Shown in pieces: positions 8,929-25,260 of a stretch of 64,000 nt of DNA. A program made the translations under genes and the position numbers. Source of the stretch: Botryllus schlosseri (lineage: Eukaryota); contig CM119372.1 of NCBI GenBank assembly GCA_051294905.1, positions 11,408,001-11,472,000 on the forward strand, read 5' to 3'. The notes under the pieces are model-generated. The model was given only the letters and a program-made list of their open reading frames with translations, searched no databases and had not been told where the DNA came from. How positions within the stretch are numbered: position 1 is the first letter of the stretch; each line of letters opens with the position of its first letter.

Positions 8929-9302
8929 TATAGTGGTAAATAGAGGCCAAACTGAAATGCAGACATGCTCGCTATATGCAACCAAAATTGAGATTCCATT
9001 CCGGGTCACTGGAACTCGAAGGATGTTGCTTTCATGTTGCCGATGTAGTAAACCATGGTTCAGTGTAGGCTTAAACAACGCCGAGCTAGCAAATCGCATC
9101 ATAGCATAATTATTGGCGTGAAGAACGTTTTTTAGTGCTGAGGTGTCGTACTGCAATTGCTCAATGGAGGTAGCATCTACGTGCACGTCTGTACTTTTCT
9201 AGCTTGAGGCAAAAGAAATTCTCGGCAACTGAACATGAATGTTTTAAAAGTAGCTAATACGTAGTAAGTGTCCGTATAGTTGATGGTTGTTGGGTTGTCG
9301 CT

Positions 9303-11320
9303 ATGTCGCTTTCAAGAATGAGGACAATGCTAGTGTTAGCAATATTCGTACAAATCTCTTCTGGATTTTGTCCAGCAGACGTGGATGGTAAGCCACCAGC
9401 AATGTTCGACGAAGAAAACGACTTGTTCCCAAGTGGAGGTGAGATCCCAGTATTTGAAGACGGAAAGCAGCCTGATATTGTAGAAGGCGACTCTGATTTC
9501 GACGGTAACGAGGTAAGGTAATAAAATGAGAAGCACTCCGACTATTTTGGCGCGAAACATTCCTGCAAATTAATTCCCCCATCCAAGCATATTTAGCATT
9601 TAATTTTATGGCTATCAATATTACAACAGTAATAATAATGCTAAGCTTAAGAGATAAATGTCTGTTCCTTGCTCAAACACTCAACTGCTACTACCTAAAC
9701 CAGACCTTGCACGGCCCACGTGAAATTGCGTTGCGTAGACTAAAACTATAAGGCTGTATAAACTGAACCAGAAATATGCGTTCATTTTGAAGCCTGTTTC
9801 TATATGTGCTGCAATTAAGTAACGTATTCCAGATCCGAAATGAAGGCATGTTTTGATGTAGCAAAGTATATGCCGATTAAATGACACAAATCCCTGTTTT
9901 CAAACAGTTCAAACCATATTTGTTTCCATTGTTTAACATTAAGAATTATACGGTCCGTCCTTTAAGCTGTTACTTAATACGTTTACAAATCCCTAATTCG
10001 TAAAACAATTCAATCAGTCCACCTGATTAGTGGTCATCGTCACGCATAAATGATGAAAGGTCGTGTCAAAAAGAATGGCGACGAGATTGGTGGGATTTCA
10101 GGAGTATAATTTGAGTTCGCACTGTAAGGAAAACACTCTGTAAGATACAGACATTAGGCTGAGGCTGTGTTATTGCGAATTTCGTACATGCTACCGTATC
10201 TCGCAAAACAATAAGACTATTTTATTAAGCCACCGCCTGAGATGCAGCAATCAAACTAGCTTTGTAATATTCTAAATACATTTGGGTGTCGTGATGGAAA
10301 AGGGAGTATGTGGATGAATTTGAATCATGAATATTTCATGTTTACCATTGTTTTGAATAATGACACTGAATTAATATGATCAAAATTAATTCTCACGTTC
10401 TTATTGCCTTTTTATTAACTTATCCAATTAGCAGTCTGTATTTGCAACATAAGTCACTGTTTTCAATTTAGAAAAAAAAAATAATGCGCCACAGAATATA
10501 GCTTAACGTTTGGGCCGGCTCGCTAACTTATTTTCTGATTGTTATTCGGTCCCTCGGGAAAACGAGAGGGTTCATGCCCCCGAATGGGAAGCCTGTGACT
10601 GGATGACCCATTTGTGTTTCGATTAGCCTTTCACGCTCCAATGGTATTCTCTTACTATGGCTTTAAGCATTGCCTGTGCAGATTGATGCCCTCATCGGGA
10701 GTATGTAACATTTGTAATATAAATTAAAGGATGTGAACCTTTTTCACAGCATCTGCAGCAGCTTGCAGATGCAGGTAAGCGATTGAATTTTTTTAACTTC
10801 GTTGTACGATTTCTTCTGATTACGTGATGCGTGTCAATATAGTTACGTCGGATAAGATGGACGAAATATATGAATTGGAGGGGAAAAAGACATCTGCCAG
10901 TTTGTTGCTAAAGTACCTCATTCAAGAAACGAATATAGAACCTGAATATCTCACCGAGATATTTTTGGAGAAAGCAGAAGTATCGGGAGTAATCGGTTGG
11001 TAAAGATTCCTTAGTGAATTTAACTTGTATCTATTCATATAATACTTGCGTGTATTCTCGTTCACAGATCTTGAAAAAAAGATTTTCACTGAGCAAACTT
11101 CCTTGAAGTTCCTCTCTAAAATTCTCCAACATCTACAAGTGTAAGTTGATTTTTAATTTCATATACATGTTATAATATAGCGTTCATATAATTACACCTT
11201 CCCATTAGAAATCCACCTGCAAAGGAGATGGAAGACGGGAAGTTAGCAGCTGAGGACTCTCCGGAGGATATAGAGGTTAAACAACAGGATGATGGCGATC
11301 AAACTAAGGATGAACTATAG
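9303..11320 (+). CDS. ER-lumenal small protein, paralog 1 (190 aa; signal peptide, acidic linker, conserved core, C-terminal KDEL); exons 9303-9512, 10750-10774, 10843-10995, 11068-11140, 11209-11320
   Basis: All introns GT-AG with compatible phases; the spliced frame is open and ends ...QQDDGDQTKDEL*; hydrophobic N-terminus MLVLAIFVQISSG. Confidence 0.85.
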
Positions 11321-12210
11321 AACCAACTGCGCATCAGTTCAAATCAGGGATATCTAGACATATGCCCAGAAAATTGATGCATCTATAATAGTATTTAGGA
11401 TTCAGTCTTTCATTGGTCAGATGTTTGTTTATATGTTTATTCAAAGAGCTCTGTTTTCGACATCTTCCTTCTTTCGTTATATCGCAATCTTGTGGTGTTT
11501 ATAATTGATAAAAATTCTAAATAAATGATCAAACTAACCGTTTTGGATTAATCACATGGTATGTGCACATCTGCACGTAGCAATACGTACCAGCATGGCT
11601 CTGTACTTCGACAGCACCTCCCATAACGTTGGTCTCTCGTGGGCCTCATAAGATGATAAAGCAAAAATCTGGGAGGAGAAGCCCCAGACACCCATTGGGA
11701 TGTACGTTTTCACAACTACTTGTGAACACGAGTTCTTATTCTCATAGTCAGTGAGGTATTGTGCAGTTTAGTCGCGCGAAGAACGAACATTTTCTTAATT
11801 CATTGAAATCGGTCAATAATATTGGTAATTTCATATACAGTCGACTCCGCTTAATCCGGACACTGGATAACCCGAGCAACCGTTTTAGTCGGCCAAAATG
11901 CCCAGGAACGGAAAAAAAGTAAAAATTGTAATGAATTAATTAATTCGGACAATTTTCCGTTTATTTCGGACGCAGGATCGCAATTCCTATCGTTAGATTA
12001 TGGCACAATTTTTTATCCTCTCTCAGCCCACGTAATCAGATTTGCCGGTAAAGCCGAGGGAGGTGGTGTCTTTGAAAATTGAGGGCATAGTAACGCCCAT
12101 ATTGGTATCAATTACTTTGTTGCATGCTGTTATTTCGTGACCTTCCGTCTGCTATACAGACAAAAGATATTCTAATCGCCCAAAAACGTTCACAACCCCG
12201 CTCACGACTT

Positions 12211-12562
12211 TAGGGTTGCCGTACGTCCTCCTTTAGGAGGATTTGTCCTCCTTTATCAGGAAAATAAAATTGTCCTCCGATGACGCCTAAAAGCCTTCCT
12301 TTTTGGCAATTCGTCCTCCTTCACAGCTTATAGAGCTAGGCTAATGAACAGGGCCAACGGAAAATAGGCATAAATGACGCGAAATAGGTAATGCGGACGT
12401 TCCAGCCGGTCATTCGGGGGTCGAAATAAATGATGACCTTTTTTAAGTCAACACCTTAAAATATTTCAAAATCAACTGCTTTCAATTTCGGTGAACTAAC
12501 TTTTATGATTTTAAAAAACAGAAACTGTCTTCCTCTCGGAATACCAAAATATGGTAACCCTG
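12211..12562. mobile_element. hAT-like MITE, TAGGGTT-terminus family
   Basis: Ends TAGGGTTGCCGTAC and TATGGTAACCCTG; similar to 44203-44565. TSD poorly conserved. Confidence 0.55.
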
Positions 12563-13215
12563 TGTAACTTTGATTTACTATATAGGCCCAAATACGCACC
12601 TTACGTACGTACGTACGTACCATCCTAAAAAGGTTGACTACTTTCACATATACCACCACATCGAAAATGTTGGGTTAACGTCGAATTTTCCTCATGTCGC
12701 CATGCCGCTACATGTTTCTGGATATACGTAGTATATGCCTGTCGCGATATAGACAGCATCCCACCCTTGAGTTTTTCCATTCAGATCTGGCTTTGCTGGG
12801 CATGCCCTGGGTTTCTGGGTTTTATTCCGAAAATCTAAGTTTTACAACATCATGTAACTTGGTATCACTTTTCCGGTTTGAAAATATTTAATTCCGTCAT
12901 TATCAACTTAGTAAAGGCAGTTTTAGCAAGGTTCGAATTATTCTCACAATACTTTTCGTCGCGATTCGCATGTAACTCACCACATGACCACGACCAATTA
13001 AATTTTAATTTCAGGGGCAAGCGATTAGTTCTGCATCATTTACGACTGTAATTAATTATACAGTGAAATTTCAGACGGTGTTTCTCATCTATCTCATTGC
13101 CGTAGAATCCCTGGTGGTCTCAAAAATATGGATTTTACAAGTCCCATTACTAGGACTAAATTTTGTTTTCAAAACTACTCCATATTGAGGTTGAAGTTTA
13201 GTTTAGTTTAATATA

Positions 13216-14180
13216 GGGGGAGATGTGATACCGATGGATCAAAAATTGGAAAATGATCGCTGGCCCCAAAATGTTCAGCCGAAAACAGCAGATCTTTTGC
13301 CGGATCAGCACTTTCATGCAAGCCATAGCTATTGCGCTCATATCCATGAATATCCGTCTTTTCAAAAATATTTATGGATGTTCAAAATTTGTTGCTCGAA
13401 CGTATCATCGGTCCCCACCCAGTGGGTCCAATAGCACACGACCCGGGAACCTATGAGACATACTGTCAAAAACTCAGATGTGACAATTTTTCTTGCTCAG
13501 TATTGTAATCGCAGCTACAGCAAGCTAAAGAAGAATGTTTGGTCGCAAATATCAAAAAAGATAATAAATAATAACTCAAATGTTGCCATAAAATCACGTT
13601 TCGATTTAGTCTCGAGCTTATAAATTTGAGGGTATATGCAGATTGCCCGAAAATCGACATTGTGACTTCCAAATACCTCGTTATAGCGATAAAACATTCT
13701 ATGTAATTATTACATAAAGAGTTTCTGTACGTAGGCGGGTTTCAGTTGTTGCATGATTAGTATGCTTGATTATTTTGCTTGATTTTGCTATTGTATCATC
13801 GGTCCCCACCCTACGAATTTTATACATGAATCGAAAAAAATTTCACTCGAGGAAGGTATTGAATAAAATAATAGGTGCCATTATATAGCCTGATACAAGC
13901 CCTACACTTCACAATAAAAAAGATTGCTGGTTTGTTCGTGTTGAAGGTTACGAAGAAAAATGTATGCGTCGATCGAAATTTAGTTTACACCCCCCAAAAC
14001 AGAAAACATCTGTCAGAGACCCCATATAGCTCGCGCCCGTCGAAATTTTTTGTTAGTGAGGAAAGATTTTGCCAGCATGCAATTGTAAACAAGTTCACGG
14101 AGTTTAATCAAGGAATTATCATAGAGAATTTTTAAAGTATTTTCGGTCCCAGGGATCCATCGGTACCACATATCTCCCCC
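13216..14180. mobile_element. Non-autonomous TIR element flanked by TATA
   Basis: TIR GGGGGAGATGTGATACCGATGGATC / GATCCATCGGTACCACATATCTCCCCC; TATA on both sides. Superfamily not determined. Confidence 0.65.
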
Positions 14181-14749
14181 TATATTCAGGAAGTCATTTC
14201 GGATAGTTACTGTCTTCTGAATGTATCACAATGTTGTGATGCCTTGAAATGTTGATACAGTGGTTGTAATATTAATTAGCCTATATAGTTTCCACAGAAC
14301 CACTATTATGGATAAATATGTGCAAAAAGACTCATTCATTAAAATTTCCATTTTGCCTATCTGTACAGATTGAGATAGAATAACTGTCGCCCTCAGCTGA
14401 TATACCAGATCTTTATATCGAGAAACGTGATGTAAATGTAATGCTGTAGTGAACGCGAGCATAATCGATATCTACCGCGCTTAAAAAATATTACATGTTG
14501 CAAAGCTATACAAGATAGATTTCACATGTGTTAGGACTTTTGTTATTCGAACACAAAACAAATCCAGAGTTTCTACTATAGGTTAGGTAATTCAAGGTAA
14601 ACAGCCTCCGGCATGACTAAATTGTCAGCGCTCGTCTATATTCATAACATGCACTGCAAAGCACAGTGCATACGTACATTAGTATTTTATGTTGGTTTTA
14701 GCTAGAGATATAAGGAGAAAACTAACCTAGTAATGACCATTTCAAGCAT

Positions 14750-15600
14750 ATGATGAATAGTATGGAATCTATGTTATTGGCATTTACAATCTTGCTGCTT
14801 GGCATATACAGCAATGGCGAGCCCGAAGAACGCAAGGTAAGAAATGTAATTTAACAAGATAGTGATAGACCCTATAAATGGCGTTCAAAAGACGCGTAAA
14901 ATCAGTGGAACTAACAGGCGGTATTCTCTGTTTCAGTTTTTGAATGAGATTATTGACGCAAGTAAGTAAGATCTTACGATTTATGTTCGGTTGGAATTGG
15001 ACCATGAGTTTTTGTATCGACAATCCCAAACGATTTATTATTCGTCTGTCAGCACTAAACAGCAAATTCGATGACATATTCGCGGGGGAGGATAACTCAG
15101 CTACGGCTTTGGATATGTTAAAGTACAGCATCGAGGAAACAACGATAGAGCCCACATATTTGGCAAAAGTATTTTACGAAGCCTTCGATGTTACTTCCGA
15201 TGCAGGTTACATTACAATGTTGTTTCAATAGCAAGTGTCTGGACAATTTAAACATCCACTTCAGAACTTGGTGATCACAAATTCAAACTGGAAGACGCAG
15301 TAGATATGATGAATAAAGTGATAAAGCACTTTCAAAAGTAAGTCACAAAATGGAAAAGAGTTAATGACCAACCACGTGATTCAATAGTAGTGAAAGATAC
15401 TGACTCGACGCCGATGGGAGATTATAAATTATGTCGCTCCAGACTACAATGGCTATTTTGTTTCTCATCGCTTATTGCCTTTGTTGAGCAATGAAGCATG
15501 TCATTATACACTGCGACATTTTTACAGGTTGGCCATCCACGCTGGTAAATCTATGTCACCTGAAGACGAGATTCCTGATCAATCCAAGGCGGAGCTGTAA
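14750..15600 (+). CDS. ER-lumenal small protein, paralog 2 (136 aa; C-terminal KAEL); exons 14750-14836, 14937-14961, 15053-15205, 15265-15337, 15528-15600
   Basis: Signal peptide MLLAFTILLLGIYSNG; internal exons of 25/153/73 nt as in paralog 1; exon 3 has 19/51 identities to paralog 1 without gaps; ends SPEDEIPDQSKAEL*. Confidence 0.85.
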
Positions 15601-15958
15601 AGCGGATTGGAGATATATTAGGCAAATTTATGAAATTATTTGCGTGCGTGAATTGCGTGTTAGCATGTTGAATTGTAGTCCCACAAACACAAATAAATAT
15701 ATTTGAGCAATGTTGTGTGTGAAGTCTGCATGACAGTTCCGTTGTTACACAAACCTGTTCCCGCTTCACTTACATGCACATCGTGAGCCCGGAGGGCACC
15801 GTTCCGCACGATCATACTTCGCAGCGTTCTTCCGTATTCACGGTATTAGCCACTAGCCACAAATTGTGCTAGCAGAATATGTACCGGTCACGAATGATCA
15901 ATAAATACTAGACTGCAGCAGTGTTAGAGTATTCATCGCAATTCGGTACAACGGAATC

Positions 15959-17783
15959 ATGATGAGTTACATTAGAAGTCTTTCTTTGCTTCTGTTTGTT
16001 GTTTCCGTGGAATCAGGACAATTTGAGCTTCCAGATCTGAAGGGTGTAAGTCTTGTTATTCTGATCGAATCCAGTCGATTACTTTAGCAACACTGTCACT
16101 TTAAAATTCACAGGCCTCTGACTCGCTCATTGATATCGGTGAGTAATATCTTGGGTATTCTTAGCGATTTGTAAGGTCTGTTCGCAAATATCGCTTATTG
16201 CAGTCACTGATCTATATAGTTACACGAGATGCTTCCGCTCACATGCTATCTGGATCATTAACACTACAGTACTGTGCATAACGATTACTCTATTTTAATC
16301 CGAATCTAGTATCAATTGAGATGATTCGAGTCGAGATGGCGGAGTCGATGCTTTTGGGTAGTTGTTTCGATGGTCTTTTGTCACCGCTCGAGTCTGGAAA
16401 TGGCGAATTCCTTATCATATCTTTCAGTTCAAGTAGCACGAGGCTGTACGACGGTACTCACGTTCATTGAAATGACATTTCTGTGATCGGCACGCAGTAC
16501 TGTCACATATAGCTACATTGATTGTGACTGGCAGTACTTGCATATTAGTGATCAAGTGTTATTGTAATGACGTCATAATAAAGCCTACTCAATTCAGAAT
16601 CGAATCACTGAGGTACTCGATTTGCCCCGGCCCTAATTATAACCCACAAGTTTCATTTCATGTCCTAATTGTTTAAGGTATACTGGAGACGTGTGCTGAG
16701 CTCTGCATGTGAAGTGCCTCGTAGTCGTAGTTGACACTTGTCCTGTAGCATGTTTTGTGCTATTCGACCAATAAAATCAGGCTAGGCTTGCTAAGTAGCG
16801 TAAATTTGCACTTACTGATTTCCCATTGGCGATTGATCATTTAATTTATCTTCTAGTGCTTTCGGATGATTTCGACAGAATGTTTAACCAAGGAAAAGTG
16901 AAGATAAGCGGCCTGAAAATATTAAGACACATTGAAGAGAATACCAAATTACGTGGCGAAAACTTCGAAACGCTCTTCCGTGGTCTAATCGGCGCTGAAT
17001 CAATGGCAGGTTATAAATACATATTGCTCTTTTGACTGCAACTCGGGGCCTACTACGTTATCATAGGCCCCGCTGCAACAACTTAAGATCGGACGATCGA
17101 TCAGATCGTCAAGCTCAAGGTAATAACATGCTATTTCCCATATATTTGACCGAAATTGGCTTTTTGGAATCAGTGATTCTGAGCGGTTTATTTCGTTGAA
17201 ATTTACATTGTATACACATATGAGCCGACATAAATTACTTGGTGCATTTTATTTTTACACTACTTATTTTACACTACTGTCGTTATCAGCTATAGCCCAC
17301 CTTTATATGCATAGTGTATTTAGATCTGGAAACAAAGAAATTCAGTTGGAATCAGGCCACGTCAGTTATCAATGCAATCATAAAGTTATCGGACAAGTGA
17401 GATTGTTGGATTTTTCTATCACACATGTCTTTTATCGGTTACTCTAGCTTTATAGCCGAATATATCGGTGTCGCCAGTAAGCCATCTGCGTTGTTGAAAC
17501 TATCTATCAAAAACCTATCTATTTTTGAAATATATTTATTTATACACCAACTAGTATTCAGAAAACGGTTTGATTAATAAGCTTTCCAAATACATTGGAC
17601 CCATTTGCAATCACCGTATGCATAGTGTACATTACTCGTTATTTCTAATTTGTCAGTATTTCCGTGAATGAATCCCGGAAACCGAACACCAAGTACAAAG
17701 CAGAAGACGACAGGATCACTAAAGCGAAAAAACTGATGAAAGAAAAACGCAAAAAGACGAAACAACAAAAGCAGGAATTATAA
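15959..17783 (+). CDS. ER-lumenal small protein, paralog 3 (154 aa; Lys-rich tail, C-terminal KQEL); exons 15959-16045, 16114-16138, 16857-17009, 17324-17396, 17657-17783
   Basis: Signal peptide MMSYIRSLSLLLFVVSVESG; same 25/153/73-nt exons and phases 0/1/1/2; exon 4 begins DLETKKF versus DLEKKIF in paralog 1; ends KKTKQQKQEL*. Confidence 0.85.
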
Positions 17784-20216
17784 CGAATCATTGTTCCAAA
17801 TGACTTACAAGTAGTCTTCCCAATCGGGATTCAAGTCCAACTTGACCAGAAACCCGAGTTTTTATGAAAATAGAACAAATTACTGGAATGCGCGATTCGG
17901 ATTCGTTGAATGCTATTCCTGCACCGTTGATTATTATATTGATTATCGCAATATACTAATAGCACTGTTGCTCACGATAAAATGACATGATGACTGATGA
18001 CAGAATGTCAGAATATCTGTCAAAAGTTATGATATAATAATTTGCATTTGTCAATATTGCAGTACTGTTTAAAGTGGGCTTGTTCGTTTCAACTAATAAA
18101 CATTTCGTTAATGGTATAGGGAGATAGGTAATAAGGCCCAACGATGCAGATGGATATTTGAAAAATCAATAATCCGTCAATGGCACTATACGTGACAATA
18201 TTTCTGTTTGGCTCGATTTGTTGATGCAACTTTATGTTTGTCTCGCGCTAACTTCGAAAATGGAAATATCCTTTTCATATTATAGATTGCCTACTTTTCA
18301 ATTTACCCCCCCCCTATTATTTCCTCAGGAAAATTTCTGGTTTGAAAGCTGTTTGTGTAAACGTACGTACACCCAAGGGTGTACCAAAATTTCAAAAGGG
18401 TGTACCTCTCAGATGGGGTGTACTGGGGTGTACCGGATCCGCGTTTAAATGGACCAATGGCTAGCTATCACAATAGGCAAGTTTAAGCTTCAGAACATCT
18501 GAACCGAGAGTGCAATATCGTACAATGTTCATATCAGCTTTACCCAGCTTGTATATGGCATTCCTTTTGTGATGTCACAAGCAAATGTTTCTCATAATTT
18601 CACAGCTGGTTTTCAACTTATTCATTCCTTTCGGAATAGAACAGGGCGGAGTTGACTGTGTTCTGTTCAGCATACCACATTTGTATATAATGATTCTCTA
18701 GGAAAACGGCACGAGAGCTCATACATTTTGAATTGGTACTTCCTGCGACATGCTTATAAATAGTGCTTAGCCAGGGAGTCTCAAGGGGGTCGAGTTTGAG
18801 AACCACTGTGTTAGATCGTGGTCCGGTAATGGCGAGCTCTGATTAGTATTTATCATTTCCAATAAGTTGAAGCCTTGCTCATCCTTATTTCAACAGACCA
18901 GAGGTGGCCAACCTGCAGCCGTAAAACAATAATTATGCAGCCCTCTACAGTCTACACATAATTAAATTAGAGTGTGTTGGCGGCCCACGAGCTGGTTCCC
19001 ACATCTTTGTGAGATTTTAATTAAACTTGAACATTTTCTTCACGCTTGTTGCAATTCAGGGTGGCAATGGATAAATATTTGACAGTAATAAATGAAACAA
19101 CCAATTATCGACAAAATTAATTTTCCAAGTGGAAATTTTTTTTCGCGCACTGTGCGACTATAGACAAGGAATCCAGATAACTTTTCCTTTTTGATCTCCC
19201 GGACCGGTAAAACTTCAAAACAAACGTTGCAGACCAGTGAACTATCAAAAACCAAATATGACTCTAAATTTAATTACGACAAATCCCTGCAACTTAAATG
19301 TAATATTGGAAACTTCATTTAATGATGTCTTCTTGATACTAGATATTATTATATGGTTCTCTTCTGCAAGGCGAAGTTTGCTGATTGTGATTGTTAGGCA
19401 TTGAAAGAAATGCGAGCGTTCTATTTACTATAGATGGGGTCGGGAACCTATGGCTCATTTGGGTGGGCCAAGACATGGCTTTTTGACAAATTCTTAATTT
19501 TGAACTTAATAATTTGTTGACCAGTTGCTGCAATATTGATAAATTTTCATATCGACCAGAATAATTATTCTCGTGGAAGCATAAACATGTCTTTGAGAGG
19601 TCAGTGGGGTATTCAAGGTTAAAGGCTCATATTTCCTTTTCAAAATCCTCAAATTTAAGTTGCTGTCGTGCCGGCGACTAACACGACTCGCGAATTCGAT
19701 CTACCCGACATCGCGTATACCACGAAATCTTGGATTGCACGACAATAGCAGACATGGCGACGCTTGTACGAAAATTCAGTTTTCAAATACACATTGTCTT
19801 GTCTAATACGCCGAAAAATGAAGCGGCATTTACAATTACAAATTAAAATCAACGCCATAATTATCCATGTTATGGATTGGTAAGTAGCTTTGTAGTACCG
19901 CCGTAAAAATATAGGCCTGTAGCGCAACTTTATGTTACGCCGAATATACATGCGAAGTCGATCAATATTTCGATTTTGAAAATCAGTGCGACAATTTGAA
20001 TAATATCAGGGAATATAAATTCTAAGCTATATTTACGATGAGTTTCGCTATCACAGGGCCTCTATTATACTGCCAAATTCGCTTGATTGCACTGTCGGAA
20101 TTTACCGAATTTCGTTTAAAAGTCTCTGTACCTTTTGCATATAACTTGTCCGAAATAAACTGGTTCTTTATCACCATTCACCATGCACCATTGTGACGCT
20201 CGCCTAGAGTATAGAC

Positions 20217-23112
20217 CAGTGATTCTCAACCGCGGCTCTCCGAGCCGCATGCGGCTCTCGACTGCTCTCCGTGCGGCTCTCACTAACGATGTGAAATCAT
20301 TGATGCTTCTACGGAAATTCTAATTATTCATGATCATAAATAAATCGCGCCTTCAACACAACAAATGTACGTTTATGTTCACGTTTACTGACGCGAAGGT
20401 CATTCCCTGATCACAATAGAATCCTACGTAATACAAGTTGTACGGGTTGTGACGTAACATTACCGATAGTAATTTCGGTAGGCTTTAAATCCGAACCTTT
20501 ACTGCTTTACTGAAGGCTCTGACCGTCTGACCTAAGCCTAATCAGGTGTCTGTAATGAGACGGGCGAAGTTTATTTCGCTCGAGACGGCGGCTCATATTA
20601 GAATACGGGTGACAAGAGACTCGGTCAATAAGACAATCAACGTTTGGGGTAACTGCAGGTACTTTATTTTCTTACTCTTTGCTTTGATCTTGATAGCGTT
20701 AGAAAATATCGGAGACTTTGGTTCAATGATAATGTCAGGTTCAGATCAACCTGCAAAGAAATCTCGCACCCTTGTGCAAGAAAATCGGGCCTTTCAAAGT
20801 GAATGGGAAGAGGCGTATTTTCAAATTGAGGAAAACGGCAAAGCGAAATGCCTTCTGTGCCCTATAATAATAAACGGTGTAAAATCTTTCAACGTTAAGA
20901 GGCATTATAAAACACATGCGGGAAAATACGACGTCTATCAAGGTGAATCAAGGAAACGGAAGTTAGAATGTCTGAAAGCAGAGCGTAGCAAACAAGGAAA
21001 AATGTTTTTAAAAAAAAAAGAACCCGAAGAGGTAACAATAACATCATATAAGATCAGTCATCTATTGGCCAGCAATATGAAGCCATATTCTGATGGCGAA
21101 ATTACGAAGCAGGCTATTGTTTTGTTTACCGAAGACAATTGTTCTCCTGCCATTCAGCAGAAAGCTAAAAAATTGCAGCTTAGCAATGATACAGTAACGC
21201 GTCGTGTCGATTGCATATCCCAAGATCTGCATGAGCAACTTATTCACAAGTCGCAAGATTTTTCTTACTACTCGCTTGCTCTTGACAGCACTAACGACAT
21301 TACCGACATAGAGCAATTAGCTGTATTCATCCGGGGAGTCATGCCAGATTTCAAGATTTGCGAGGAGTTTCTTACTTTGCGATCTATTCATGGCACAACG
21401 AAGGGAACCGACATGTTTCGTGAATTTCATGCTACTCTTCAAGAAGCGCATTTAGACCCATCGAAATTATATTCATTGGCGACAGATGGCTGCCCAGCAA
21501 TGCTCGGCAAAAATCTAGGTCTTCAAGGACTCGTCAACAAATGGCGTGCTGAACAGAATCTTGACGCTGTGACTTGGCAACACTGCATTATACACCAGGA
21601 AAGTCTTGTTGCTAAATCATTAAAGATGTCCAATGTGACAGATATAGTAATATCGACCGTAAATTGGATTCGAGCAAACGCACTTAACCATCGAAAATTC
21701 AAGGCTTTTCTCACCGATATTGATGCTGACCATGGAGACTTGATCATGTTCACCGCTGTACGATGGCTAAGCCGAGCTGCATGCCTCAAAAGATTTTACG
21801 CGCTACTTCCTGAGATTAAAATATTTGTCGAAGGAAAGAAAGACATCCCTCAGTTGGGAAACGAACACTGGGTTGCTGACTTGGCGTTCATGGTGGATAT
21901 TACCTCACACCTGTCGTCACTAAATCGGAACTTACAAGGAAATAACAAGCTCTGTCACGCCTGGTACGGGACAGTGTCTGGTTTCATTGAGAAATTGTGT
22001 CTTTGGAGAAAGCACCTAGAGGAGGGTGTTACGACACATTTTGTAACGCTTTCAAACCACCGACAGAATGGATCATTCAAAACATATGACCAGGTTATTA
22101 GTACCTTGATTGACGGGTTTAAACGTCGAATAGAGGGAATGCATCATTCCGTACCCCTGATGAATATATTTTCAAACCCAATGGCAGTAGATGCCGCCAC
22201 TGCCCCTGATATTTTTCAGATGGAACTGCTGGACTTGCAGTCCGATATAGAATTGCGACTGTTGTTTCAAAGCAATGGACTCCTTGAATTTTGGGGTGCT
22301 GTTCCTGAAGAAAAATACCCCAACCTGATAGCTAACGCATCGAAGAATGCCTGCATGTTCGGTTCAACCTATGTATGTGAAGCCCTTTTCAGCAAATTAG
22401 TGAGGATCAAAAGCAAATATCGCAACCGATTGACTGATCGTCATCTGAAACAGCTCTTGTGCACAGCTTCCTCCACGATGAAACCTCGTTATGACAAACT
22501 TGTGAAAAATCAAATTCAATTTCAAGTTTCGCACTAAGTTGCAAAATAGATAGTGATCACCACAGATTTAGCGTCACGCCTTGTTCATCCAAACTCAATT
22601 CACATGCTCTCGGAACTCAGAAAGATTGTGGATTAAGTCTCAATAAACATGTTGTGACGCTAAATCTGTGGTGATCACTATCTATTTACTATCTGGAAGA
22701 ATGTAAATTGTAAATCATCCGCAATCGGCTTCAACGGTGAAGGGTATACCTCGGTATACCATCGGTGAAGGGACGTGGCTGGGTAACGTCGTTTCGGAAG
22801 TTGTCCGTATGGGGAGTGCCCGCTGTCACAGTGTCGTCTGGGGAAATTGTCGTATTTGTTTTGGCCGTCGCTGTTTGAGCCAATCGCGGTTTTGGCCGTC
22901 GCTGTTATGGCCGTCGCTGTTGTGGCCAGTCGGTGTTTTGGCCGTCGCTATTAAGGCCGTCGCTATTTTAGCCGTACACCATTTCGTTGATACCATTTTT
23001 GATGATATTTTTCTATTCTCAATAAATTACGTTATTCGTGCCATCATGCGGCTCCCGACAGAGTTGAGGTTCATAAAATGGCTCCCACAGTGAAAAAGCT
23101 TGAGAACCACTG
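20217..23112 (+). mobile_element. Full-length hAT DNA transposon, Buster/Charlie/SPIN-like (2896 bp)
   Basis: TIRs CAGTGATTCTCAA / TTGAGAACCACTG; perfect 8-bp TSD GTATAGAC (20209-20216, 23113-23120); internal transposase ORF. Confidence 0.95.
20726..22537 (+). CDS. hAT (Buster family; GTF2IRD2/EPM2AIP1-like) transposase, ~603 aa from the likely ATG at 20726
   Basis: Uninterrupted ORF with BED-type finger (KCLLC...NVKRHYKTH), catalytic motifs SLALDSTND and LATDGCPAM, HCIIHQESL (CxxH), VRWLSR, and FGSTYVCEALFS. Confidence 0.95.
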   Translation: MIMSGSDQPAKKSRTLVQENRAFQSEWEEAYFQIEENGKAKCLLCPIIINGVKSFNVKRHYKTHAGKYDVYQGESRKRKLECLKAERSKQGKMFLKKKEPEEVTITSYKISHLLASNMKPYSDGEITKQAIVLFTEDNCSPAIQQKAKKLQLSNDTVTRRVDCISQDLHEQLIHKSQDFSYYSLALDSTNDITDIEQLAVFIRGVMPDFKICEEFLTLRSIHGTTKGTDMFREFHATLQEAHLDPSKLYSLATDGCPAMLGKNLGLQGLVNKWRAEQNLDAVTWQHCIIHQESLVAKSLKMSNVTDIVISTVNWIRANALNHRKFKAFLTDIDADHGDLIMFTAVRWLSRAACLKRFYALLPEIKIFVEGKKDIPQLGNEHWVADLAFMVDITSHLSSLNRNLQGNNKLCHAWYGTVSGFIEKLCLWRKHLEEGVTTHFVTLSNHRQNGSFKTYDQVISTLIDGFKRRIEGMHHSVPLMNIFSNPMAVDAATAPDIFQMELLDLQSDIELRLLFQSNGLLEFWGAVPEEKYPNLIANASKNACMFGSTYVCEALFSKLVRIKSKYRNRLTDRHLKQLLCTASSTMKPRYDKLVKNQIQFQVSH

Positions 23113-23707: not shown

Positions 23708-25260
23708 CTACAAGCGACATTCCTCTCGGCAATTCCCACACCACGTCTGAAGGTAGGAGCGCTGCTGTACTTCGATAGGTCTCCACAAATTCTTTAGCTC
23801 TGCGACACTGAAAGGCTCAAAGTTCTTCTGTGCCAGTGTTTCCGCTGTTAAATTCAATCACTCATCAACATCAGCCAAACATTTCCCCCAAAGGGTGGAT
23901 AATAGATATTACAGTATCTTCCCTATTATAGCCTAGTCTCAAATTGCGCAAAAAGACTGACAGAGACTTGTGATAGAGGCAACGAGATTGTATCAATATC
24001 TTATGATTTTACTCGTGCCTAATGGACATGCATATGCATATACGTGCACATTGCACAATGTACATTACACAAGCAACTTTGTTTGTCTTATATAGCCATG
24101 ATCAGGCCCCCCTTGGGGTGCGAGAACTGTTCCTAGGTTGCGTTAATGTTAGATCGCTAAAGATTGGTTAGGTCTACTCAAGCATCTCTATTTGTATATC
24201 CTTGGGTCTACTCTACGTAAATACCAAAAAACAAATTCATATATTGCTTTGGAAATTTGCAAGAGCAGTATGCCACTGAATTGTCCCATGTACTAAAAAA
24301 TATCTATTCACTGCAGTGAGCACAAGAGTTTTTCTCTACTACCTTTGTAATCCTTCGTAACGTGTTTAGAGTTCGGTTCATATTTCCTTCGAAATATTTA
24401 CTGCCTTCAACGTGAATTGATGTGTTGCGATAGTTCAGAGCAGCATAATTTACTAATATACGTGACGCAAATCTCAGCGTTTACAACAAAGAATTCGTCA
24501 ACATGTTCCACATCAAATCAGGCAATTACAGGATGATGACACTTCTCCCTCGTCATCACTGTCCCTACGTACCATGTGCGACTGTAGGATCAGCTAACGA
24601 CTTGTAATTCTGTCTTGTCCGGTTACTTGAATAATAATAAAATTAGATCGTTTTGGTATTCAGGCAATTCTATAATGGGGTGCGAGAATTGATTGGTGAT
24701 TGGAATGGGGTGCAGCAAGGAGGAAAGGTTACGCCAGTATAGCTTTTAACACGAGCCGACATTCGGCTCCGTTTCAACACAAAACAAGAGAATATTGGCG
24801 CAACGTCTACTGGCCTACATAAAATCTATAACTGTATCTAACTATCCATTCTAGTGTAATGGATGAAACTGCCCAAACTATACAATGGAACGACTCGTTT
24901 GATTTGCACCCAAAGTTCGATCCAGGATTCCTAGTAGACTCATGAGCATGGGAGACAAGTGGTAACTTTTTTATACAATAAGCATTTCAATACACGGGAA
25001 TTCAATGAATATGAATTGTAAAATCAGATTAACATTCTCTCACCAAAGCGTTTCCTTCTGCCGACAAGCAGCACGTTTCTGCACACAAAGCATAGATGTT
25101 TCGAAGAGCATTCGCCTCTTTTCTCTACCATTTCGTTCGATATTTCACTCATGTCATGATCCGCGTAGTTGTCGAGATCTCCATGACCAGCCCTCAGCAA
25201 ACCATAACCGCTCGTTGAATATGAAGATAACAACACAAGGAAGAAGATCCATGTAGCCAT
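23708..25260 (-). CDS. Secreted peptide/hormone-like precursor (150 aa); exons 25260-25044, 24930-24884, 24581-24530, 23844-23708
   Basis: Signal peptide MATWIFFLVLLSSYSTSGYG; KR, RRKR and RR sites; Cys segments GECSSKHLCFVCRNVLLVG and SYLQTWCGNCREECRL; four GT-AG exons join in frame (phases 1/0/1). Confidence 0.7.

What the first reader, a model, noticed from the sequence alone, without database searches (positions are those of the whole stretch)
9303..17783. Hidden tandem cluster of three small ER-resident paralogs ending KDEL, KAEL and KQEL
Seen in sequence: three plus-strand genes, none recovered as an intact gene by the ORF track. Each has a signal-peptide exon, then internal exons of exactly 25, 153 and 73 nt in phases 0/1/1/2, then a variable tail exon. 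The ~83-aa core aligns without gaps (P1 KMDEIYELEGKKTSASLLLKYLIQETNIEPEYLTEIF; P2 KFDDIFAGEDNSATALDMLKYSIEETTIEPTYLAKVF; P3 DFDRMFNQGKVKISGLKILRHIEENTKLRGENFETLF). Established knowledge: signal peptide plus K-x-E-L means ER-lumen retrieval by the KDEL receptor. I do not recognise the core as PDI, ERp29, CNPY, MANF, MCFD2 or CREC family. Inference: an old, diverged, possibly lineage-specific family of ER-lumenal chaperone/adaptor-like proteins that has kept its retention signal through two duplications.
Basis: partly seen in the sequence, partly recalled or inferred. Interest (0 to 1): 0.85.

Follow-up and report, generated by a model that had tools for sequence, protein, structure and literature searches.

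The report
Three ER-retained pseudo-EF-hand paralogs
Three neighbouring, expressed five-exon genes of a sea-squirt genome encode small secretory-pathway proteins that end in KDEL, KAEL and KQEL and belong to an uncharacterised family, seen so far only in Styela-like ascidians, whose core is predicted to fold like a calcium-blind EF-hand pair.

Summary
Three plus-strand genes lie at 9303-11320, 14750-15600 and 15959-17783. Each has five exons, with internal exons of exactly 25/153/73 nt, all 12 introns GT-AG, and intron phases 0/1/1/2. The proteins are 190, 136 and 154 aa and end in KDEL, KAEL and KQEL. RNA reads and transcript contigs of the same species show 10 of the 12 junctions exactly. 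The other two (G3 introns 3 and 4) lay outside the one 6-kb read call; a gapless match to an orthologous cDNA supports them.

The own genome holds only these three copies. Outside it I found only Styela clava (four tandem, collinear "uncharacterized" RefSeq genes ending KEEL, RIEL, KDEL, KEEL) and a few unnamed transcript or metagenome fragments. All eight full tails read [KR]-x-E-L. The duplications predate the split from Styela.

Best reading: soluble ER-lumen residents retrieved by the KDEL receptor, with a Ca-independent EF-hand-like binding module. ER residence and function are inferred, not shown.

The parts
9303..9512 (+). G1 exon 1: start codon, signal-peptide-like segment and acidic N-terminal extension (210 nt, ends in phase 0)
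   Evidence: Model. Loose ends at 10748 read the end of this exon in 34 RNA reads and 3 contigs. Hydropathy.
10750..10774 (+). G1 exon 2, 25-nt micro-exon
   Evidence: Joint 10774>10843 in 48 reads and 3 contigs; acceptor side shown by the loose ends at 10748.
10843..10995 (+). G1 exon 3, 153 nt, first part of the core domain
   Evidence: Joints on both sides. All 4 variants seen in RNA runs here are synonymous.
11068..11140 (+). G1 exon 4, 73 nt, last helix of the core
   Evidence: Joints 10995>11068 and 11140>11209.
11209..11320 (+). G1 exon 5: acidic tail ending KDEL plus stop. AATAAA at 11520, and read depth ends near 11525.
14750..14836 (+). G2 exon 1: start codon and signal-peptide-like segment (87 nt)
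   Evidence: joint 14836>14937.
14937..14961 (+). G2 exon 2, 25-nt micro-exon
   Evidence: Joints on both sides, in 28 and 23 reads and 3 contigs each.
15053..15205 (+). G2 exon 3, 153 nt
   Evidence: Joints 14961>15053 and 15205>15265.
15265..15337 (+). G2 exon 4, 73 nt
   Evidence: Joints 15205>15265 and 15337>15528.
15528..15600 (+). G2 exon 5: short tail ending KAEL plus stop. AATAAA at 15692.
15860..15958 (+). G3 5' UTR. The mRNA 5' end is marked by template-switch-oligo loose ends at 15859.
   Evidence: 14 reads carry the SMART oligo sequence before 15859.
15959..16045 (+). G3 exon 1 coding part: start codon and signal-peptide-like segment (87 nt)
   Evidence: joint 16045>16114 in 28 reads and 2 contigs.
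16114..16138 (+). G3 exon 2, 25-nt micro-exon
   Evidence: Joint 16045>16114. Loose ends behind 16138 read the start of exon 3 (27 reads, 2 contigs).
16857..17009 (+). G3 exon 3, 153 nt
   Evidence: Start confirmed by loose ends. The donor at 17009 was not tested with reads; it is supported by a gapless match to cDNA-derived P0004.
17324..17396 (+). G3 exon 4, 73 nt
   Evidence: GT-AG sites and reading frame; orthologous cDNA P0004 and RefSeq P0010. Not tested with reads.
17657..17783 (+). G3 exon 5: N-x-S/T sequons and basic tail ending KQEL plus stop. AATAAA at 18095.
   Evidence: Not tested with reads.

Best explanation
A tandem array of three old paralogs of a small, lineage-restricted protein family, seen so far only in Styela-like ascidians.

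Each gene encodes four parts:
- a cleavable signal peptide;
- in the P1 type only, a roughly 50-residue acidic extension;
- a cysteine-free core of about 85 residues;
- a flexible charged tail ending in [KR]-x-E-L.

The core is predicted to fold as an N-terminal helix plus an EF-hand-like pair (two helix / short beta bridge / helix units). Its loops have lost the calcium ligands.

Proposed working: the proteins enter the ER lumen co-translationally and stay soluble. Whenever they escape to the cis-Golgi, the KDEL receptor returns them through the C-terminal tetrapeptide. In the lumen the closed pseudo-EF-hand domain would act as a calcium-independent protein-binding module, that is, an escort or adaptor for particular secretory clients or partners. 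The three types have diverged in charge (P1 and P2 acidic, pI about 4.1-4.6; P3 basic, pI about 9.4, with conserved N-glycosylation sequons).

Shown here: the genes, their splicing and expression, the conservation of the cluster and of the tails, and the narrow range.
Predicted: the fold.
Inferred: ER residence, retrieval, and the binding role.
For: - **Gene models and identical exon architecture:**
- **Expression and splicing:** 10 of 12 junctions seen in RNA.
- **Copy number:** only three copies in the 495.5-Mb genome.
- **Relatives:** a 50-position exon-3 profile searched against 1.84 billion representatives found 5 true relatives. One is Styela clava XP_039267268 (132 aa, KDEL). The others are a cDNA-derived 153-aa P3 ortholog ending KQEL and three exon fragments.
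- **Styela cluster:** four tandem plus-strand paralogs, all named 'uncharacterized', ending KEEL, RIEL, KDEL and KEEL, collinear with the window.
- **Orthology:** the P1 clade (98/99) and the P3 clade (100/100) each contain both species.
- **Constraint:** pS is about 0.83-0.94 (saturated) against pN 0.23-0.44. In G1 all four core exon-3 variants are synonymous, whereas 4 of 5 tail variants change the residue.
- **Targeting features:** hydrophobic N-terminal h-regions, no later hydrophobic span, 0-1 cysteine in the mature protein, and conserved sequons in the P3 type.
- **Tetrapeptides:** KDEL and KQEL fit PROSITE [KRHQSA]-[DENQ]-E-L. KAEL is the tail of ER-located human MSRB3, and position -3 tolerates every residue except proline (Raykhel et al. 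2007, PMC2140024).
- **Fold:** two independent AlphaFold2 models from different paralog types give the same helix/strand order. The core model has pLDDT 86.4 and pTM 0.77.
- **Structural neighbours:** nearly all are EF-hand proteins.
  - Foldseek PDB: best hit a myosin essential light chain (E 0.02, probability 0.99); apo S100A2 at TM 0.57/0.59.
  - Swiss-Prot models: myosin light chains, and KASH5 at TM 0.62.
Against: - No experiment or SignalP run supports ER entry or retention. Raykhel et al. also show that many KDEL-like tails are dispensable for ER localisation.
- The alignments behind the models are shallow (11 rows, mostly fragments).
- No EF-hand Pfam model matches, even at E up to 10.
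- The loop positions 1, 3, 5 and 12 are not calcium ligands.
- An internal-repeat test between the two halves was not significant (E 0.08).
- No partner or client is known. A complex prediction between two Styela paralog cores gave no verdict.
Confidence: 0.68

Rival explanations
1. They are ER calcium-buffering or calcium-binding proteins, functionally like the CREC family (reticulocalbin, calumenin). Binding would go through the EF-hand-like core or, with low affinity, through the acidic extensions and tails.
For: EF-hand-like predicted fold. P1 and P2 types are very acidic, with mature pI 4.1-4.6 and D/E-rich extensions. The Atlas feature search with the Styela P1-type protein lists only EF-hand clusters among its named hits, including MCFD2-like ones, at weak scores of 0.76-0.80.
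Against: Neither loop keeps the canonical ligand positions 1, 3, 5 and 12 in any member (alignment). No EF-hand Pfam hit. The P3 type is basic (pI 9.3-9.5). The best structural matches are apo or non-calcium-binding EF pairs (myosin essential light chain N-lobes, Ca-free S100).
Confidence: 0.12
2. They are secreted or conditionally released factors. The K-x-E-L tails would give only partial, regulated retention, as with MANF's RTDL, so the real site of action is extracellular (blood, tunic).
For: The tails differ in predicted strength. [quoted passage not shown] The proteins are small, charged and cysteine-free, with disordered tails that evolve fast.
Against: Every one of eight full-length members, across three orthogroups and saturated synonymous divergence, keeps [KR]-x-E-L as its very last residues, while the tail just upstream is free to vary. 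This argues for selection on retrieval itself.
Confidence: 0.12
3. The core is not EF-hand-derived at all. It is an unrelated small helical bundle, possibly a fold of its own, that merely superimposes on EF-hand pairs.
For: Low Z and TM values, no sequence signal to any EF-hand family, shallow alignments, and a non-significant internal repeat. The first full-length model also matched unrelated helical proteins at the same Z.
Against: Both models place a short beta bridge just before the second helix of each unit, the hallmark of paired EF-hands. With the confident core model nearly all top hits in four independent libraries are EF-hand proteins.
Confidence: 0.2

Closest known systems
MCFD2 (multiple coagulation factor deficiency protein 2)
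   Same: A small soluble protein of the early secretory pathway: signal peptide, disordered N-terminal part, then a single EF-hand pair used as a protein-binding module (cargo-receptor partner of LMAN1). MCFD2-like clusters appear among the weak Atlas feature hits.
   Different: MCFD2 has two canonical calcium-binding loops and no KDEL-type tail. No sequence similarity was detected here. The loops of this family lack the ligands.
CREC family (reticulocalbin, calumenin, Cab45)
   Same: Secretory-pathway EF-hand proteins with a signal peptide. Several members carry a C-terminal HDEL-type retrieval signal and are acidic.
   Different: CREC proteins carry six or seven canonical EF-hands and are about 300 aa or longer. 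This family has one degenerate pair in 130-225 aa and gives no Pfam EF-hand hit.
Calcium-free EF-hand pairs: myosin essential light chain N-lobe, apo S100 proteins, the KASH5 EF-hand-like domain
   Different: All are cytosolic or nuclear-envelope proteins. Sequence identity is 7-17%. No common descent has been shown.
Styela clava LOC120342319, LOC120342492, LOC120342493 and LOC120342277
   Same: True homologs: the same 25 / 153-156 / 73-nt exon plan, the same gene order and strand, and tails KEEL, RIEL, KDEL, KEEL.
   Different: Styela has four copies (the P1 type is duplicated), and exon 3 of its P1-type genes is 156 nt. All are annotated only as 'uncharacterized protein'.

Membership tests
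Soluble ER residents retrieved by the KDEL receptor | N-terminal cleavable signal peptide | tested here: met
   All members have a basic or polar n-region, a 9-residue window of mean Kyte-Doolittle hydropathy 2.6-3.5 within the first 25 residues, and small residues before a likely cut site. This is a heuristic only; SignalP was not available.
Soluble ER residents retrieved by the KDEL receptor | C-terminal tetrapeptide of the KDEL type at the very end of the protein | tested here: met
   KDEL and KQEL fit PROSITE [KRHQSA]-[DENQ]-E-L. KAEL is the tail of ER-located human MSRB3, and position -3 accepts all residues except Pro (PMC2140024). Orthologs end KDEL, KQEL, KEEL, KEEL and RIEL.
Soluble ER residents retrieved by the KDEL receptor | No membrane span after the signal peptide | tested here: met
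   The highest 19-residue hydropathy after residue 30 is 0.25-0.68 in all members.
Soluble ER residents retrieved by the KDEL receptor | ER localisation that depends on, or is improved by, the tail | not testable with these tools
   Needs tagged expression with and without the last four residues.
EF-hand domain pair (Pfam clan EF_hand) | Two helix-loop-helix units joined by a short antiparallel beta bridge between the loops | tested here: met
   DSSP of both AlphaFold2 models. P0003: H40-43 / E50-52 / H53-63 and H68-79, H84-88 / E91-93 / H94-110. P0004 core: H20-27 / E32-34 / H35-45 and H51-61, H66-71 / E73-75 / H76-95. This is prediction only.
EF-hand domain pair (Pfam clan EF_hand) | Structural superposition on solved EF-hand pairs clearly above background | tested here: inconclusive
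EF-hand domain pair (Pfam clan EF_hand) | Canonical 12-residue loop with oxygen ligands at positions 1, 3, 5 and 12 | tested here: not met
   Counting back from the beta-bridge residue (loop position 8), positions 1/3/5/12 are, for example, F/G/E/A and E/L/G/K in the Styela C protein and F/Q/K/K in loop 1 of window G3 (alignment, models).
EF-hand domain pair (Pfam clan EF_hand) | Match to an EF-hand profile HMM | tested here: not met
   No EF-hand family at E up to 10 for any of nine family queries: the exon-3 translations of G1, G2 and G3, exon 1 of G1, and P0003, P0004, P0010, P0011 and P0012. No PDB sequence hit either.
CREC family | Six or seven EF-hands in a protein of about 300 aa or more | tested here: not met
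   One degenerate pair in 132-225 aa.
MANF/CDNF, CNPY and MZB1 (saposin-like ER proteins) | Conserved cysteine pattern forming the saposin-like disulfides | tested here: not met
   Mature proteins have 0-1 cysteine. No such Pfam hits.
ERp29 / Wind C-terminal domain | Match to the ERp29_C profile, or a five-helix D-domain fold | tested here: not met
   No Pfam hit. Absent from the top 50 structural neighbours.
RAP (LRPAP1) | Three-helix-bundle domains, HNEL tail, about 320-360 aa | tested here: not met

The most novel reading that the evidence does not exclude
A family born within stolidobranch ascidians of calcium-independent pseudo-EF-hand escort proteins of the ER. Its three ancient types (two acidic, one basic and glycosylated) would each accompany a particular lineage-specific secretory client. 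They would be KDEL-retrieved counterparts of MCFD2 or RAP, and a new class of ER cargo adaptor.
Probability: 0.15. Interest if true: 0.6.

Novelty: new variant of a known kind. Interest (0 to 1): 0.42.

Why it matters
Soluble ER residents are a short and mostly ancient list, so a lineage-restricted family that has kept a retrieval signal through at least two old duplications is unusual. It offers a compact test case of how a new ER-lumen protein arises and specialises. If the pseudo-EF-hand core binds specific clients, it would add a calcium-independent EF-hand adaptor to the early secretory pathway.

In practice, the result gives a first working description to three genes in this genome and to four 'uncharacterized' RefSeq genes of Styela clava. 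It also shows that 25-nt micro-exons make such genes invisible to ORF-based reading.

The finding is not surprising in kind. Signal peptide plus KDEL is textbook, the predicted fold is a common one, and no function has been shown.

Tried and rejected
- **Pfam.** The exon translations and all five full-length relatives gave only chance-level hits: WH_Rok, NatA_aux_su and eIF3_N, all far below their cut-offs.
- **PDB sequence search with the family profile.** Only a designed TPR protein and a crystal protein, at E 0.09-0.8.
- **Word-indexed protein searches.** P0003 and P0004 alone found only themselves. The family alignment added only the three other Styela paralogs.
- **Atlas feature search.** Nothing usable for P0003 or the P0004 core. 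For P0012 there were weak EF-hand leads only.
- **First full-length model.** At pLDDT 69.7 it gave mixed, uninformative neighbours. The trimmed core model of another paralog was needed.
- **Complex prediction.** The Styela C core with the Styela D core gave no verdict (score 0.01, chains folded poorly without alignments). This counts neither for nor against binding.
- **Internal repeat.** The hhalign test between the two helix-loop-helix halves was not significant (E 0.08). MAFFT's placing of exon-4 fragments on the first half is therefore not evidence of duplication.
- **dN/dS.** No value could be computed because synonymous sites are saturated.
- **Literature.** Nothing on the Styela locus names, or on ascidian KDEL/EF-hand proteins.
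- **K-mer shares.** The shares for the 3' half of G3 in small, presumably transcriptome, assemblies (0.21-0.31) fit expression but do not prove it.
- **Rejected families.** Saposin-like (no cysteines), ERp29 C-domain, RAP and CREC; see the membership table.


Full report

Reading 9000-18200 and splicing the exons in a script gives three plus-strand genes:
- G1: 9303-9512, 10750-10774, 10843-10995, 11068-11140, 11209-11320.
- G2: 14750-14836, 14937-14961, 15053-15205, 15265-15337, 15528-15600.
- G3: 15959-16045, 16114-16138, 16857-17009, 17324-17396, 17657-17783.

In all three the internal exons are 25, 153 and 73 nt. The first exon ends in phase 0, the following phases are 1, 1 and 2, and every intron is GT..AG. 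The products are 190, 136 and 154 aa and end KDEL, KAEL and KQEL. AATAAA signals follow at 11520, 15692 and 18095.

**Expression and splicing**

Only one read-laying run of at most 6 kb was allowed. I placed it on 10720-16719 so that all three genes were touched. It used bulk RNA-seq raw reads (X23) and contigs of three further runs of the same species.

Eight joints appear exactly as predicted once the stated cut offsets are applied:
- 10774>10843, 10995>11068, 11140>11209
- 14836>14937, 14961>15053, 15205>15265, 15337>15528
- 16045>16114

Two more junctions are shown by loose ends. Reads entering at 10748 carry the last bases of G1 exon 1. Reads leaving at 16138 carry the first 30 bases of G3 exon 3.

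That makes 10 of 12 junctions observed. The last two (G3 introns 3 and 4) were not tested with reads. They are supported by a gapless alignment of the G3 protein to a 153-aa protein from an unspliced-free cDNA contig of a related species (P0004 / L005) and to the Styela RefSeq model P0010.

Fourteen reads carrying the template-switch oligo end at 15859. This puts the G3 mRNA start about 100 nt upstream of its ATG.

**Copy number and range**

A profile of the three exon-3 translations (A1) finds only these three places in the 495.5-Mb genome. The same profile run by HMMER over 1.84 billion representative proteins finds five true relatives:
- Styela clava XP_039267268 (132 aa, KDEL, 'uncharacterized');
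- the cDNA-derived P0004 (KQEL);
- three ORF-style fragments covering exon 3, from unnamed Logan and ENA samples.

The other three listed hits are repeat proteins or weak matches. The Styela locus (L004) carries four tandem plus-strand paralogs. I rebuilt them, and they correspond to RefSeq proteins P0011, P0012, P0003 and P0010. They share the same micro-exon plan (25 nt, 153 or 156 nt, 73 nt) and end KEEL, RIEL, KDEL and KEEL.

tblastx shows that the two clusters are collinear. In a maximum-likelihood tree the P1-type clade (98/99) and the P3-type clade (100/100) each contain both species. The P2 type is unresolved but syntenic. The duplications therefore predate the split of the two ascidians.

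Nothing was found in Ciona, Oikopleura, amphioxus or vertebrates. That search used only a 50-position profile, so absence there is not proven. The identification of the window's organism as a stolidobranch-type ascidian is itself an inference from these nearest relatives.

**Selective constraint**

Between orthologs, synonymous sites are saturated (pS 0.83-0.94) while pN is 0.23-0.44. Among variants seen in the RNA runs, the four in G1 core exon 3 are all synonymous and the one in exon 4 is T>S. In tail exon 5, four of five variants change the residue. The core and the last four residues are conserved. The linker is not.

**Targeting features**

All members have a hydrophobic N-terminal h-region and no later hydrophobic span. 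Mature proteins carry 0-1 cysteine. P1 and P2 types are acidic (pI 4.1-4.6). The P3 type is basic (9.3-9.5; the Styela copy 6.8) and has conserved N-x-S/T sequons near residue 117.

KDEL and KQEL fit the PROSITE pattern. KAEL is the natural tail of ER-located human MSRB3, and in the reporter screen of Raykhel et al. position -3 accepted every residue except proline (PMC2140024). The same paper also warns that many such tails are not strictly required for ER localisation. Eight of eight known full-length members end [KR]-x-E-L.

**What the core is**

No family is recognised by sequence in Pfam, the PDB or the Atlas.

AlphaFold2 on the Styela C protein with a family alignment gave a core at pLDDT about 80-90. 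A second run on the core of the P3-type protein P0004 gave pLDDT 86.4 and pTM 0.77. Both show the same order: an N-terminal helix, then twice a helix, a three-residue strand and a helix. This is the layout of a paired EF-hand.

With the confident model nearly all top neighbours are EF-hand proteins:
- Foldseek against the PDB: myosin essential light chain at E 0.02 and probability 0.99; apo S100A2 at TM 0.57/0.59.
- Swiss-Prot models: myosin light chains, and KASH5 at TM 0.62.
- The ESM Atlas: a myosin light chain cluster at TM 0.60 and KASH5 at 0.62.

The scores are modest and below the level at which the tool's notes allow a firm call. I therefore treat 'EF-hand-like fold' as probable, not proven.

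Counting from the strand residue as loop position 8, positions 1, 3, 5 and 12 hold residues such as F/G/E/A, E/L/G/K or F/Q/K/K. The defining calcium ligands are absent, and no EF-hand HMM matches. The family therefore cannot be filed as a calcium-binding EF-hand family. It looks like the calcium-free, target-binding kind, such as essential light chains and apo S100.

**Mechanism proposed**

- Signal-peptide-driven entry into the ER (inferred).
- A soluble lumenal protein (no membrane span: shown by sequence).
- Retrieval from the cis-Golgi by the KDEL receptor through the terminal tetrapeptide, presented on a flexible tail (inferred from conservation).
- A closed pseudo-EF-hand domain acting as a calcium-independent binding module for clients or partners (inferred by analogy only).

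The acidic extension of the P1 type could add low-affinity cation binding. A heteromer of acidic and basic paralogs is conceivable, but the one complex prediction gave no verdict.

**Rivals**

The rivals are a calcium buffer, a conditionally secreted factor, and an unrelated helical bundle. They are listed separately with tests.

**Novelty**

The Styela homologs already sit in RefSeq as uncharacterised proteins, and no paper mentions them. The kind (signal peptide plus KDEL-type tail; secretory-pathway EF-hand proteins such as MCFD2 and the CREC family) is known. The combination is not described: a single degenerate EF-hand-like pair with a conserved retrieval tail, in a lineage-restricted, thrice-diverged tandem family. 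I rate it a new variant of a known kind, of moderate interest.

Noticed in passing
window 13211-14183: A MITE-like element in the G1-G2 spacer, bounded by 30-nt terminal inverted repeats (13211-13240 / 14154-14183, 83% complementary). Its k-mers have very high depth in all contig sets, so it is a dispersed repeat.
   Followed up: partly
window 15600-15959: G2 and G3 are only 359 nt apart. A transcript contig (X1 record 5) runs uninterrupted from G2's last exon into G3 exon 1. Template-switch-oligo reads mark a separate G3 5' end at about 15860. The G2 3' UTR and the G3 promoter/5' UTR therefore abut or overlap.
   Followed up: partly
window 20546-22537 (+): An intact 663-aa single-exon ORF with a hAT-family transposase dimerisation domain (PF05699, E 2.7e-9), just downstream of the cluster.
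   Followed up: partly
window 25039-25116 (-) and L004 17957-18034 (-): A conserved coding segment downstream of the cluster in both species (tblastx, 42% identity over 26 aa). The next gene on the minus strand is therefore syntenic too. It lies in the stretch another first-reader note calls a possible prohormone.
   Followed up: no
window 11067, 11140, 11209: Loose ends with low agreement in the raw RNA reads suggest a second G1 allele that is more than 5% divergent and carries an indel in the tail exon. The sequenced animals are highly heterozygous.
   Followed up: no
window 16520-16719: A stretch in G3 intron 2 reaches contig depth above 2,000 in X1 and above 1,400 in X3. It is a highly repeated or highly expressed element unrelated to the gene.
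   Followed up: no
L004 1-1413 and 6534-8731: Styela clava has two P1-type copies (213 and 225 aa), against one in the window. Their exon 3 is 156 nt rather than 153 nt, a one-codon insertion in the first loop.
   Followed up: yes
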